From: Octopus bimaculoides
Taxonomy: Eukaryota
DNA length: 64,000 bases
Direction of reading: 5' to 3'
Assembly: GCF_001194135.2 (NCBI RefSeq)
Contig: NC_068982.1
Location: forward strand, 150,602,796-150,666,795
The notes beneath the pieces are model-generated. The model did not search any database and had not been told where the DNA came from. It saw only the letters and a program-made list of their open reading frames with translations. Positions within the stretch are counted from its first letter, which is position 1. Every line of letters starts with the position of its first letter. Both the position numbers and the translations under genes were made by a program. This document shows positions 46,101 through 63,947 of the stretch, piece by piece.

Positions 46101-49100
46101 TTTCTGACTCAGCTCCTTTCTACTGATTCTTTCATACACACTCACAATGCACATCCATGGAACATGCTTGTTTAATTTCTTTTAAGTTTTCTCAAGTCCT
46201 CTGCATTCAAAACCCATGTCTCTCTACCATGCAGCATTGCAGATCTAACACAAGGATCATACAATCTGCCCTTCAATCTTAGGGAAAAGCTCCTTGTTAT
46301 CAACTCTGGTAATAGCACCCTGAACTTTACCCAACCAGTTCCAACTCTAGCTACTATACTTTCATAGCATCCACCTCACTTGCTAATTACATCTCCTAGG
46401 TAACAAAAGCTTTCAAATATTTCTAACGAGTCCTCAATTTCAATTTCCAGTGTACTTGTAAATACAGCTCCAATGTGTCTATCACATATGAAGCTTACAC
46501 TGTTTGACAGTCTGCCAGTGGTTCCACTGCATTGCTTATGTGCCCATGGTTTACACTGAATACAGCATATGGAATTTATACCTATCCATTTTCTATATAT
46601 TGAATAAGGCCATTCCTTTGATGATACAGGAGTCCTGTGTTCTTTCTTACTTATTAAAACCTTTGTCTTTGTCAGGTTTACCTTAAGGCTTCTAAATTCC
46701 AGGTTTAGCTTCCATGCCTGGAATTTCTTCTCTAATCCCACTCTAGATTTAGTTATAAGAACTAGATCATCAGAAATATAAGGTTTTCCATGGACAGCCA
46801 GTCTTAAACTCCTCCGTGATGGCTTGCAGGACTATGATGAAGAGGAAAGGAGGAGAGGAGTTGCTTGCTTTAGAAAAATGCAGTTTTAATTCACGAAACC
46901 AATCTTCTTACATTACAAAGAGTTGCTGCTAAAGATTACATACTTGAGGATTTTTATGCTTCTTTGCTTTGATCCATGACTTGGTCAAGGCTTCCCATGT
47001 AACAAGGCCACCAAAGTAGATCATACCCTGAAAAATAATTCACACAAATATTGATTTCAACATTAGGTACAAAATCAGAAACTTGGTAGTAGGGAACAAT
47101 ACTTAGACTAATGTTTTACTGGTTACTGAAATGTGAGATTTAAAGTGCAGGATTCAAATGTAAATGAATGTATTTAAATACGTCAAGGAATAGTTTGCTG
47201 CTTTACCAGTTCTGCAAGAATATTGCAACAATTCAAGAGACGCACTGATGAGAAATAAATCTTTGCTTGGTTAATATGCTAATCAATTATTAATCAGATA
47301 TATATTTAATTTCCAAAAGATAGGTGAACCAAGACAATGTAGGATAAAATGTTTTGTCAAGAAACACCACAAAACACCTGTAGTTGATTTGAATCCATGA
47401 TCTTTTAAACAGATAATCCTGTACTTTATCAACTAATCCATTCTCTATACTGATTAATGTGATACAAACCGTACCAATTTAGTTATGGTCATTGGTGATG
47501 CTGAGCCTATGGAGTCCGTTTCTATGAAGGTTTTCACATTGCCATTTATTGGAACTATATCTCCATTTTTCAGTTGGATCTGTACAGAAAAACAGACAAG
47601 AATTCTTAGGAAAATTTATTTTATATGAAACAAATCACAGATCCCTCCAGGGAGATGGTCCAGTTTAATATGTAGAAAAGGTGTAAGGAGAAACTTCATA
47701 CAGTGTACCCAATGCAAGCTATGGACACATAAAAGGTGCAGTGGTATCATTGGAAGACTAACAGAGAAAGTAGTCTTTACATGTGGCAGATATGCAGGTA
47801 TACTAAATACCAGGAATGTACAAAAAAAAAAAAGAAGATTCCCTCAAATGTCAGAGGGGATCCTTAGAAGTAATAGACAAGTTTCCATTATTTAGGTGAC
47901 CAAGTTAGAGGTGGAGGTTGTTTTGAAAGCATAGCTGCTAGAATAACAATAGTCTGGGCGAAGTTGAGAGAGTTACTATCTCTGTTAGTAATGAAGGGCC
48001 TTTCCCTCAGAGTGAAAGGCAGATTGTATGATGCCTGTGTATAGACAGCTATACTACATGGCAGTGAGATATGGGCTGAGAATATGTGAAGGCTTGAAAG
48101 AAATAAAGCCAGTATGCTCCACTGGATGGATAATATCAGTGTGCATATACAACAACAGAGTATAAGTGATTTGAGAGAAAAACTGGGTATACAAGGCATC
48201 AAATGTAGTGTGCAAGAGATAAGATTGTACTGGTGTGGTCATGTGATGCATATGGATGAGGACAGTTGCATCAAGAAGTGCCAATCTCTAATTGTGAAGG
48301 GAACCTGTGGTAGGGGTAGATCCAGGAAGACGTAGGATGAAGTGGTGAGAAAAAATCTTCAGATGTTGGACCTCACAGAGGGGATGACAGGGGACTGAGA
48401 CTCCTAGTGGTTTGCTGTGCTTGAGAAGACATGTCAAAATAAGTAAAATCGTGGTTGTTCTTGCATCTCTTTTCAGATGAGCATTCCAAATATTGCATGC
48501 TCATGGGTGGTGCTATGTAAAACGCACCTGTACTAGTGCCATGTAAACACACCCATGCTGGTGCTGCATAAAAGCACCCAGTACACACTGTAAAGTGGTT
48601 GATGTTAGAAAGGCCAGAGACTGTGACTGCTGAGGACATGCGTAAGCTCGCAAGGAATGAAGCCAGTATGCTCTGATGGATGAGTAATGTCAGTATGCAT
48701 ACTCGACAGAGTGTAAGTATCTTGAGAGAAAAGTTGAATCTAAGAAGCATCAGTTGTGGTGTGCAAGAGAGACGATTGCGCTGGTATGGACATGTGGCGA
48801 GAATGGATGAGGATAGCTGTGTGCAAAAGTGCCACACCCTAGTGGCTGAAAGAACCCGTGGAAGAGGCAGGCCCAGGAAGACCTGGGATGAGGTGGTGAA
48901 GCACGACCTCCAAACATTTTGATTTACTGAGGCAATGACTTGTGACTGAGACCTTTGTAAATATGCTGTGCGTGAGAAGACATGGCAAGCCAAGTGAGAC
49001 CAAAATCCAAGGCCTCTGCCAGGGGTGTAGCCAGCCCACTTATACATACCTTTCCTTCATTGGACACTGAACTCCGCTTGCGAAGACCTGTTGAGGCAAG

Positions 49101-63947: not shown

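What the first reader, a model, noticed from the sequence alone, without database searches (positions are those of the whole stretch)
47475..62705. The main dynein ATPase site (AAA1) has lost four catalytic elements: a predicted pseudo-motor
Seen vs canonical: Walker B CFDEFN becomes CLADGN (exon 2); sensor I FITMNP becomes FMTAAF (exon 3); sensor II DFGLR becomes SFTLS (exon 4); the AAA2-donated arginine finger TVSRCGM becomes TITKLGM (exon 9). Known: hydrolysis at AAA1 drives the power stroke and needs these residues. Inference: this chain cannot cycle like a motor and may act as a structural, brake or regulatory heavy chain. The AAA1 Walker A lies beyond the window.
Basis: partly seen in the sequence, partly recalled or inferred. 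Interest (0 to 1): 0.72.

Follow-up and report, generated by a model that had tools for sequence, protein, structure and literature searches.

The report
Octopus copy of non-motile dynein DNAHX

Summary
On the minus strand, 36 clean exons (63947-3902) encode residues ~2091-3752 of a dynein heavy chain, 99.7% identical to Octopus bimaculoides "DNAH5 isoform X2". Walker B (CLADGN), sensor I (FMTAAF), sensor II (SFTLS) and the AAA2 arginine finger (TITK|LGM) lie exactly where stated. They align with Dictyostelium D2026/E2027 and R2150 and yeast R2209, positions 94-100% invariant in 92 other dyneins. Both assembly gaps are in introns and hide no exon.

The gene is neither a canonical DNAH5/8 nor DNHD1. 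It is the cephalopod orthologue of DNAHX (Chai et al., bioRxiv 2025), a sister lineage of outer-arm DNAH5/8. Cryo-EM of the urchin protein shows it locked pre-powerstroke and non-motile. Support: a 100/100 bootstrap clade with Lytechinus DNAHX, and five shared insertions at identical sites (after AAA1 sensor II, the AAA4 small-domain insert, CC1, MTBD, CC2). The AAA4 P-loop is also lost, and no Pfam stalk domain is detected.

Cephalopods are the most eroded members. They have also lost the Walker B Asp, the arginine finger and (in Octopus and cuttlefish) the Walker A Thr. A-to-I editing could restore only the arginine finger. Verdict: a real finding and a new member of a known kind.

The parts
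63849..63947 (-). First in-window exon: AAA1 large subdomain just after Walker A (SLANVIAQFYYLLKCNPHFDASSIQRIIQGSSM). Walker A itself lies upstream of position 64000.
   Evidence: tblastn with the Argonauta and O. bimaculoides orthologues; acceptor cag|AGC and donor ATG|gtaaac
62568..62705 (-). Exon 2: AAA1 Walker B strand. WLCLADGN replaces WGCFDEFN (Ala 62684-62682, Asp 62681-62679).
61019..61028 (.). Assembly gap inside intron 2. It has no effect on the coding sequence.
   Evidence: orthologue proteins are continuous across the exon 2/3 junction
59960..60186 (-). Exon 3: AAA1 sensor I strand. FFMTAAF replaces FFITMNP (Asn position = GCA 60144-60142).
58502..58659 (-). Exon 4: AAA1 small-subdomain sensor II helix. 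SFTLSSMIATIRR replaces DFGLRNILSVLRT (Arg position = TCA 58622-58620). The Ser/Thr-rich family-specific insert starts here. The RefSeq-consistent donor is GC at 58501-58500; an in-frame GT alternative lies 9 nt downstream.
57068..57207 (-). Exon 5: remainder of the insert after sensor II (123-126 aa here, against 76 aa in all canonical dyneins).
   Evidence: predicted disordered (pLDDT 24-30)
55003..55195 (-). Exon 6: end of the AAA1 small subdomain and the approach to AAA2.
53977..54230 (-). Exon 7: AAA2 with an intact Walker A, GPPGSGKT (54216-54193).
53057..53143 (-). Exon 8: AAA2 strand WFLIDSQLN (canonical WIVLDGPVD).
49626..49635 (.). Assembly gap inside intron 8, within interspersed repeats. 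It is flanked by an identical 43-nt sequence on both sides (unmerged join).
47475..47579 (-). Exon 9: AAA2 arginine-finger loop. ASPMTITK replaces ASPATVSR (Lys AAA 47480-47478). A-to-I editing at 47479 would give AGA = Arg.
46944..47027 (-). Exon 10: supplies the 'GM' of TITKL|GMIYF and the start of the AAA2 lid.
43156..43191 (-). 36-nt micro-exon (INGSKNGYDIAE) with consensus splice sites.
36587..36701 (-). AAA3 exon with an intact Walker A, GPKGSGKT (36641-36618). Its Walker B, FIEDIN, is at 33603-33586.
22731..22917 (-). AAA4 exon whose P-loop is gone. LLSISSVVSDIV (22910-22875) replaces LLVGVGGSGKQS. The GK is lost in every DNAHX member (GSHL).
14113..14316 (-). AAA4 small-subdomain pre-sensor-II insert, the DNAHX hallmark. 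It runs from NKAPWTGN (14261-14238) to NLPYTQRLLLDH (14153-14118) and continues into exon 11212-11072.
   Evidence: Region is 114 aa against 61 aa in canonical dyneins, with the PWxG...NLPY(T/S) islands shared with urchin. AF2 predicts a beta-hairpin plus helix at low confidence.
3902..11212 (-). Stalk CC1 and the microtubule-binding domain (exons at 11212-11072, 9851-9595, 8095-7950, 6924-6729, 6361-6248, 5514-5443, 4122-3902). CC1 is 185 residues against 140. MTBD landmark spacing is 129 against 70-90. The NPP helix is at 6867-6844.
   Evidence: Pfam MT (PF12777) is not detected

Best explanation
The window carries the middle third (AAA1 after its P-loop, through AAA4, to the microtubule-binding domain) of the Octopus orthologue of DNAHX. 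DNAHX is an ancient animal paralogue of the outer-arm DNAH5/DNAH8 (Chlamydomonas gamma) heavy chain that has become a non-motile dynein.

Shown here:
- The AAA1 site lacks the Walker B Asp and Glu (Ala-Asp), the sensor I Asn (Ala), the sensor II Arg (Ser) and the trans arginine finger (Lys).
- In the essentially identical O. bimaculoides protein it also lacks the Walker A Thr (GKK).
- AAA4 has no P-loop. AAA2 and AAA3 keep theirs.
- The gene carries the family's AAA4 small-domain insert and its CC1, MTBD and CC2 insertions.

Inferred:
- AAA1 cannot hydrolyse ATP and probably cannot bind Mg-ATP properly, so no AAA1-driven linker swing or power stroke occurs.
- As in the sea urchin protein, the AAA4 insert holds the C-terminal cap so that the ring stays in a pre-powerstroke-like shape.
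- The altered stalk/MTBD binds microtubules poorly.
- The chain acts as a fixed-shape partner that pairs with another axonemal heavy chain (the proposed 'phi template' for inhibition and transport during flagellar assembly), not as a force generator.
- The intact 36-exon reading frame, and its conservation in Octopus, Argonauta and cuttlefish, indicate that the protein is maintained for such a structural or regulatory role.
For: Family:
- The full-length Argonauta orthologue scores 862-896 bits against DNAH8, DNAH5 and Chlamydomonas gamma chains in the PDB, and <=568 against every other class.
- The nearest non-cephalopod relatives are amphioxus, amphibian, caecilian and bichir proteims of ~5,200 aa.
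- Amphioxus P0003 retrieves Lytechinus 'DNAH8-like' P0180 (5,272 aa). Its residues V2221, S2322, T2324 and K2393 match the DNAHX paper.
- blastp sums for Octopus: ~1,900-2,140 bits against DNAHX members, 800-1,150 against canonical DNAH5/8.
- In an NJ tree of 31 heavy chains (4,214 columns), cephalopods plus all DNAHX members form a clade at 100/100, sister to canonical DNAH5/8/OAD-gamma.

Shared derived characters:
- Insert after AAA1 sensor II: 76 aa in canonical dyneins, 123-202 aa here and in DNAHX.
- AAA4S insert: 61 aa against 103-114 aa, with the conserved PWxG...NLPY(T/S) islands.
- CC1 140 against 182-185 residues; MTBD 70-90 against 129-183; CC2 101 against 119-129.
- AAA4 GK lost in all members, and a true GKT at AAA3.
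- Pfam PF12777 is absent from all members and present in all canonical hits.

Motif loss.

Functional precedent: cryo-EM of urchin DNAHX.

Not a pseudogene:
- 4,959 nt in 35 exons plus a micro-exon, with no stop codon and consensus splice sites, 1,648/1,653 identical to RefSeq.
- Octopus-Argonauta identity is an even 60-75% across all domains.
Against: - Cephalopod proteins are 4,234-4,378 aa, not the ~5,270 aa typical of DNAHX. Part of this is annotation: the O. vulgaris C-terminus is split into a second gene model.
- The cephalopod branch is very long and sits at the base of the DNAHX clade instead of with the bivalves, so long-branch attraction cannot be excluded by the tree alone. The shared indels argue against it.
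- From the urchin's side, octopus scores (2,093-2,176 bits) are no higher than the best canonical chains.
- Urchin DNAHX keeps GKT and the Walker B DE and binds ATP. Octopus keeps neither, so the 'ATP-locked' detail of the published mechanism may not transfer.
- There is no expression, protein or ATPase data for octopus.
- The presence of a separate canonical DNAH5/8 gene in Octopus was not verified here.
- The AF2 models were of low to moderate confidence.
Confidence: 0.87

Rival explanations
1. It is the cephalopod orthologue of DNHD1, the 'orphan' dynein heavy chain of vertebrates, which also lacks the AAA1 Walker B catalytic residues.
For: DNHD1 is reported to have a poorly conserved AAA1 lacking the Walker B catalytic residues, with many disordered insertions.
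Against: The orthologue has a strong, specific affinity for the DNAH5/8/OAD-gamma class (896 against <=568 bits). It forms a 100/100 clade with bona fide DNAHX and shares five indels with it. The DNAHX authors state that DNHD1 and DNAHX lack specific sequence homology. No DNHD1 sequence was available to place in the tree.
Confidence: 0.02
2. It is a decaying pseudogene, or an artefact of gene prediction or assembly, and the odd residues are noise.
For: The window has five assembly gaps, and the introns are full of repeats. Public models differ: the O. vulgaris model skips two exons and splits the C-terminus.
Against: There are 36 exons with consensus splice sites and no stop codon in 4,959 nt. 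The same substitutions (or near variants) occur in O. vulgaris, Argonauta and cuttlefish. All domains are conserved at 60-75% between Octopus and Argonauta. The gaps are intronic.
Confidence: 0.03
3. It is a fast-evolving but still active motor. AAA1 would use non-canonical chemistry (Asp in place of the catalytic Glu, Lys as the finger), RNA editing would recode it back to competence, or AAA3 would take over as the driving site.
For: Asp occupies the catalytic-Glu position, and a Lys finger keeps the positive charge. AAA->AGA editing would give Arg at the finger. Argonauta keeps GKT and the Walker B Glu. AAA3 keeps Walker A and an acidic Walker B pair.
Against: Five elements are lost at once, including the Mg-binding Walker B Asp and the Walker A Thr. 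Editing cannot create Asp-Glu, Asn or the sensor II Arg from GCT GAT, GCA or TCA. The stalk, MTBD and AAA4 lock insertions of a family shown to be non-motile are present. AAA1 is the least constrained module in this family but the most constrained in real motors: 40% identity against 76%.
Confidence: 0.06
4. It is simply the Octopus DNAH5 or DNAH8 outer-arm chain, as RefSeq names it, with lineage-specific divergence.
For: RefSeq names it 'DNAH5 isoform X2' and 'DNAH8-like'. DNAH5/8 are its closest solved relatives.
Against: It falls outside the canonical DNAH5/8/OAD-gamma clade (85% support) and inside the DNAHX clade (100%). It lacks the motifs and the stalk domain that every canonical member has.
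Confidence: 0.02

Closest known systems
DNAHX (sea urchin Lytechinus variegatus XP_041462850; Chai, Suchenski Loustaunau, Zheng, Yang & Zhang, bioRxiv 2025, 10.1101/2025.01.18.633724)
   Same: It shares the same clade, sister to DNAH5/8. It has the same insertion sites: after AAA1 sensor II, the AAA4S pre-sensor-II insert with the PWxG...NLPY islands, CC1 (+45 residues), MTBD and CC2. It has the same loss of the AAA4 P-loop, a degenerate AAA1, and no detectable Pfam stalk domain.
   Different: Urchin keeps GKT, the Walker B DE, the sensor I Asn and the arginine finger, and binds ATP at AAA1. Octopus has GKK, AD, Ala and Lys, so Mg-ATP binding itself is doubtful. Sensor II is Lys in urchin and Ser in octopus. 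The octopus protein is about 900-1,000 aa shorter. The paper links DNAHX to externally fertilising animals and names gastropods but not cephalopods; octopuses transfer spermatophores and fertilise internally (my own knowledge).
DNAH5 / DNAH8 (outer-arm dynein gamma-class heavy chains)
   Same: They are the closest canonical relatives by sequence and have the same overall domain order.
   Different: Canonical members have intact Walker A/B, sensor I/II and arginine finger, a GGSGKQ P-loop at AAA4, a 140-residue CC1 and a Pfam MT domain. They are force-generating motors.
DNHD1 (vertebrate 'orphan' dynein heavy chain needed for sperm flagellum and nodal cilia)
   Same: It is a dynein heavy chain whose AAA1 lacks the Walker B catalytic residues. 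It carries many disordered insertions and is proposed to be non-motile.
   Different: It is a separate, orphan lineage with no specific sequence relationship to DNAHX. The resemblance is convergent.
Catalytically dead AAA+ modules within dynein itself (AAA5 and AAA6; AAA2 as a non-hydrolysing ATP binder)
   Same: An AAA+ fold is retained as a structural element after the loss of nucleotide chemistry.
   Different: Here the loss affects AAA1, the site that drives the mechanochemical cycle in all motile dyneins.

Membership tests
DNAHX | Forms a distinct branch with XP_041462850, sister to the outer-arm DNAH5/8 (urchin alpha / Chlamydomonas gamma) class | tested here: met
   NJ tree with 100 bootstraps: cephalopods plus Lytechinus DNAHX plus 11 relatives at 100/100, and that clade plus canonical DNAH5/8/OAD-gamma at 100/100. 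Caveats: distance method, long cephalopod branch, no DNHD1 in the tree.
DNAHX | Reciprocal best hit with L. variegatus DNAHX (the paper's criterion: reverse BLASTP against the L. variegatus proteome) | tested here: inconclusive
   Forward: Octopus and Argonauta score ~2,100 bits against Lytechinus DNAHX, and <=1,153 against canonical DNAH5/8 of other species. The L. variegatus proteome was not available, so the strict reverse test was not run. In reverse, the urchin protein scores octopus (2,176) about the same as the best canonical chain (2,216).
DNAHX | AAA1 catalytic motifs not conserved | tested here: met
   Walker B AD, sensor I A, sensor II S, arginine finger K, and Walker A GKK in P0157
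DNAHX | Pre-sensor-II insert (beta-hairpin plus alpha-helix) between H6 and H7 of the AAA4 small subdomain | tested here: met
   The region is 110-114 aa in cephalopods and 103-113 aa in DNAHX, against 61 aa in all canonical classes, with shared PWxG and NLPY(T/S) islands. AF2 predicts strand 274-281, strand 291-298 and helix 301-316, but with pLDDT of about 45-50.
DNAHX | Insertions in stalk CC1 and CC2, and disordered insertions in the MTBD | tested here: met
   CC1 185 against 140 residues; MTBD 129 against 70-90; CC2 120 against 101. These match Lytechinus at 184, 167 and 124. Pfam MT is not detected.
DNAHX | Unusually long protein (about 5,270 aa), with a prominent tail insertion | tested here: not met
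   Cephalopod models are 4,234-4,378 aa. The models are partly incomplete (C-terminus split in O. vulgaris), but the inserts are also shorter.
DNAHX | ATP retained at AAA1, only the pre-powerstroke state populated, and a heterodimeric dynein-X / phi-particle formed | not testable with these tools
   This needs native protein and cryo-EM. The loss of GKT and the Walker B Asp in Octopus makes ATP retention doubtful (inference).
DNHD1 | Orphan heavy-chain lineage not nested in any canonical class | tested here: not met
   There is a specific affinity for the DNAH5/8 class and nesting in the DNAHX clade. No DNHD1 reference sequence was at hand for a direct comparison.
DNHD1 | AAA1 lacks the Walker B catalytic residues | tested here: met
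   CLADGN. The trait is shared, but it is convergent.
Canonical outer-arm DNAH5/DNAH8 | Intact AAA1 Walker A/B, sensor I/II and AAA2 arginine finger | tested here: not met
Canonical outer-arm DNAH5/DNAH8 | Canonical 140-residue CC1 and a recognisable microtubule-binding stalk (Pfam PF12777) | tested here: not met

The most novel reading that the evidence does not exclude
Cephalopod DNAHX has gone a step beyond the published 'ATP-locked' pseudo-motor. With GKK, Ala-Asp and a Lys finger, its AAA1 pocket may be empty or Mg-free. That would mean the pre-powerstroke-like shape is held purely by the AAA4 insert and C-terminal cap, without any nucleotide at the main site. The one restorable residue, the arginine finger (Lys AAA, which A-to-I editing would turn into Arg AGA), could be a cephalopod-specific editing switch. 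The gene's presence in an internally fertilising lineage would also break the proposed link between DNAHX and external fertilisation.
Probability: 0.3. Interest if true: 0.55.

Novelty: new member of a known kind. Interest (0 to 1): 0.4.

Why it matters
It corrects the public annotation: these octopus genes are labelled DNAH5 or DNAH8-like but are DNAHX. It extends a family described only in a 2025 preprint to cephalopods, and it shows the far end of its decay series. Echinoderm, bivalve and cnidarian members keep GKT, DE and the sensor I Asn. Vertebrates lose the Glu and the Asn. Cephalopods lose everything, arginine finger included. That gradient is a natural experiment on how much of AAA1 a non-motile dynein still needs, and on whether ATP binding is required for the locked conformation. 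The loss of the AAA4 P-loop throughout the family is an extra family marker that the paper's text does not mention.

Tried and rejected
- **DNHD1 identity.** Rejected on the class-specific PDB scores, the tree and the shared indels.
- **Exon guess.** My first guess for the exon upstream of Walker B (63033-62950, 'GINDLTFVERYLAAIS') was wrong. The orthologue places it at 63947-63849.
- **Spurious segment.** A stop-free segment at 58256-57939 that I had included in the first query is not an exon.
- **Searches that failed.** The profile search of the named protein database with the clade alignment failed twice (query too long, then time-out). A single-sequence search with the amphioxus protein gave the urchin protein instead.
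- **dN/dS.** Orthologous DNA could not be fetched because the genes span 198 kb and 144 kb. I used domain-wise protein identity and reading-frame integrity instead.
- **Motif count by regex.** The sensor I pattern matched elsewhere. I replaced it with local alignment.
- **Sensor II alignment.** MAFFT aligned the second copy of a duplicated sensor II helix in echinoderms. I corrected this by spacing and by the paper's K2393.
- **Solved DNAHX structure.** There is none in the PDB copy.
- **Pocket model.** The AF2 model of AAA1-AAA2L had pLDDT 56 and pTM 0.35, with the P-loop region below 50, so it is unusable for the pocket and I did not search with it.
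Full report
**What is in the window.** The sequence is AT-rich (about 33% GC), repeat-laden animal DNA with five short assembly gaps. The dynein-like reading frames are all on the minus strand. Guided by orthologous proteins, I built an exon model of 35 exons plus a 36-nt micro-exon, running from 63947 down to 3902. Every intron has consensus splice sites; one GC donor in exon 4 has an in-frame GT alternative. The 4,959 nt carry no stop codon. The translation is 1,648/1,653 identical to the RefSeq protein 'dynein axonemal heavy chain 5 isoform X2' of Octopus bimaculoides (P0157), residues 2091-3752. 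The window is therefore O. bimaculoides or a very close relative. It holds the part of the gene from just after the AAA1 P-loop to the microtubule-binding domain.

**The gaps.** Gap 61019-61028 lies in intron 2 and gap 49626-49635 in intron 8. Both introns are phase 0. Across both junctions the spliced protein matches the O. bimaculoides and Argonauta proteins residue for residue, and its spacing relative to canonical dyneins is unchanged (Walker B to sensor I is 53 residues against 52). No exon is hidden there. The second gap is flanked by the same 43 nt on each side, which marks an unmerged join inside an interspersed repeat.

**The observation.** Pfam recognises the region as the dynein AAA1 module (AAA_6), but at 135 bits over model positions 51-327, against 472 bits for the complete module in a canonical DNAH8. 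HMMER alignments to solved dyneins place octopus W-L-C-L-A-D-G-N on W-G-C-F-D-E-F-N, F-F-M-T-A-A-F on F-V-T-M-N-P, and S-F-T-L-S on D-F-G-L-R. Using the Dictyostelium chain offset, Ala-Asp falls on D2026-E2027 and Ser on R2150. In the full-length yeast chain, the Lys of A-S-P-M-T-I-T-K falls on R2209. These are the residues the literature defines as Walker B, sensor II and the AAA1 arginine finger (PMC8304172 Table 3; general roles in PMC4047620). For sensor I, one alignment puts Ala and another puts Thr at the Asn position; in neither is there an Asn. In 92 non-DNAHX dynein cluster representatives from across eukaryotes these positions are 94-100% invariant. The Walker A lies just outside the window, but in the near-identical O. 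bimaculoides protein it reads G-T-P-D-A-G-K-K-E-T. A fifth element, the Mg-binding Thr, is therefore also gone. Cuttlefish has G-P-T-E-V-G-K-K, while Argonauta keeps G-M-P-G-T-G-K-T.

**Which dynein it is.**
- A word-indexed search of 5.8 billion proteins found only a cuttlefish fragment.
- An exhaustive HMMER scan then found a full-length Argonauta orthologue. The next tier comprised amphioxus, frog, caecilian (5,251 aa) and bichir proteins, clearly above all canonical dyneins.
- The Argonauta protein scores 862-896 bits against DNAH8, DNAH5 and Chlamydomonas gamma chains in the PDB, and at most 568 against any other class.
- A literature search turned up a 2025 preprint describing DNAHX. It is a non-motile heavy-chain subfamily from sea urchin sperm that branches from the outer-arm DNAH5/8 lineage. 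It is about 5,270 aa long, has a non-conserved AAA1 site, occurs from sponges to amphibians, and is distinct from the orphan DNHD1.
- Searching with the amphioxus protein retrieved 'dynein heavy chain 8, axonemal-like' of Lytechinus variegatus, 5,272 aa. Its residues V2221, S2322, T2324 and K2393 match the paper's numbering, so it is DNAHX itself.
- Octopus and Argonauta score about 2,100 bits against DNAHX members and 800-1,150 against canonical DNAH5/8.
- In a bootstrapped NJ tree of 31 heavy chains, the cephalopods join Lytechinus DNAHX and eleven relatives (starfish, sea cucumber, amphioxus, Nematostella, two bivalves, amphibians, bichir) at 100/100. This clade is sister to canonical DNAH5/8/OAD-gamma.

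**Shared derived characters.** The cephalopod branch is very long, so I looked for characters that do not depend on branch lengths.
- After the AAA1 sensor II helix, all canonical classes have 76 residues up to a fixed landmark. DNAHX members have 131-202 and cephalopods 123-126, in each case a Ser/Thr-rich insert at the same point.
- In the AAA4 small subdomain, canonical chains have 61 residues, DNAHX 103-113 and cephalopods 110-114. Conserved islands lie inside the insert: PWTGN...NLPYTQ in octopus and PWAGS...NLPYTK in urchin. This is the pre-sensor-II insert that, in the urchin structure, grips the C-terminal cap and locks the ring.
- An AlphaFold model of the octopus AAA4 module predicts two strands and a helix for the insert, as described for urchin, though at low confidence. 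Foldseek confirms the dynein fold.
- Stalk CC1 is exactly 140 residues in every canonical class. It is 182-185 in DNAHX and 185 in octopus. The MTBD and CC2 are lengthened in the same way.
- Pfam's stalk model is missing from all DNAHX and cephalopod proteins and present in all canonical hits.
- Every DNAHX member, cephalopods included, has lost the GK of the AAA4 P-loop and has a proper GKT at AAA3, where DNAH5/8 has GTAKT.

Only one family feature fails: cephalopod proteins are about 900-1,000 aa shorter than typical DNAHX. This is partly an annotation effect.

**Position within the family.** The motif tables show a gradient.

| Group | Walker A | Walker B | Sensor I Asn | Arginine finger |
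|---|---|---|---|---|
| Echinoderms | GKT | DE | kept | Arg |
| Bivalves | GKT | DE | kept | Arg (Mya), Lys (Solemya) |
| Nematostella | GKT | DE | lost | Arg |
| Amphioxus | GKT | DN | kept | Arg |
| Amphibians | GKT | DD | lost | Lys |
| Cephalopods | GKK (Octopus, cuttlefish) or GKT (Argonauta) | AD (Octopus) or AE (Argonauta) | lost | Lys |

The sensor II Arg is lost in nearly all members. AAA1 is the most conserved module in canonical DNAH5/8 (76% identity between wasp and frog) but among the least conserved in DNAHX (40% between urchin and Nematostella). Within cephalopods, all domains are evenly conserved at 60-75%. This fits a fold maintained for structure, not for catalysis.

**RNA editing.** The codons are GCT GAT (Walker B), GCA (sensor I), TCA (sensor II) and AAA (finger). 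A-to-G changes cannot produce Asp-Glu, Asn or Arg from the first three. AAA to AGA would restore the arginine finger. Editing therefore cannot rescue the site.

**Mechanism.**
- Shown: the losses at AAA1 and AAA4, the retention of the P-loops at AAA2 and AAA3, and the presence of the family's lock and stalk insertions.
- Inferred from urchin DNAHX and from general AAA+ chemistry: no ATP hydrolysis and probably poor Mg-ATP binding at AAA1, no power stroke, weak microtubule binding, and a role as a fixed-shape partner of another axonemal heavy chain during sperm flagellar assembly or regulation.
- Difference from the published case: urchin DNAHX holds ATP at AAA1. The octopus pocket may hold none.

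**Verdict.** The protein belongs to a family that is already described, though only recently and without mention of cephalopods. The finding is a new and unusually eroded member of a known kind.

Noticed in passing
window 22910-22875 (exon 22917-22731): The AAA4 Walker A is completely gone (LLSISSVVSDIV where canonical chains have LLVGVGGSGKQS). Every DNAHX-clade protein examined has lost the GK here (GSHL). The text of the DNAHX preprint does not mention this family-wide marker.
   Followed up: partly
window 36641-36618 and 33603-33586: AAA3 keeps a full GPKGSGKT P-loop and an acidic Walker B pair (FIEDIN). The whole DNAHX clade has GxGKT here, whereas canonical DNAH5/8/OAD-gamma have GTAKT. 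AAA3 may be the only site in this protein that is still able to hydrolyse ATP.
   Followed up: partly
window 49583-49625 and 49636-49678: The same 43-nt sequence (cctggtgtagccctcttgttcaccagtcctcagtcaaatcgtc) lies on both sides of the 10-N gap. This is an unmerged overlap at an assembly join, inside an intronic repeat.
   Followed up: yes
window 43191-43156: A 36-nt micro-exon (INGSKNGYDIAE) with good splice sites lies in the AAA2 lid. BLAST missed it, and the Argonauta model has a longer, different segment at this point.
   Followed up: partly
window 58502-58492: The RefSeq-consistent splice of exon 4 uses a GC donor (AAAG|GCAAGA). A GT donor 9 nt downstream would add three residues in frame. 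Both fall in the disordered insert.
   Followed up: no
window introns, e.g. 46831-46053 (-), 48114-48335 and 48680-48922 (+); repeat pairs 21614-22018/47772-48178, 24684-25106/50396-50804, 41316-41660/48112-48458, 40893-41053/63490-63651: The introns hold LINE-like reverse-transcriptase ORF fragments (...RRLRWYGHVARMDEDSCVQKC...GRGRPRKTW...), several families of interspersed repeats at 73-90% identity, and long (CA)n/(TA)n microsatellites, one of them directly after exon 7.
   Followed up: partly
P0066 (Bufo gargarizans DNAH8, XP_044147017.1): A protein in the canonical DNAH8 clade has off-consensus AAA1 motifs (GPAAAGKTET, CFDEFS, and sensor I TMSPKH with Asn changed to Ser). The same toad also has a DNAHX (P0185, 5,277 aa).
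   Followed up: no
P0180, P0177, P0181 (echinoderm DNAHX), around residues 2385-2435 of P0180: Echinoderm DNAHX carries a local duplication of the sensor II helix (LFNLKSMVTVLLH ... LFSIGSIAATVMF). Automatic alignment picks the wrong copy.
   Followed up: yes
O. vulgaris locus (GCA_951406725.2), reported: The O. vulgaris annotation splits off the C-terminal Dynein_C part as a separate 326-aa gene, and its model skips the two exons that carry the AAA2 Walker A. The genes are very large: 198 kb in O. vulgaris and 144 kb in Argonauta.
   Followed up: no
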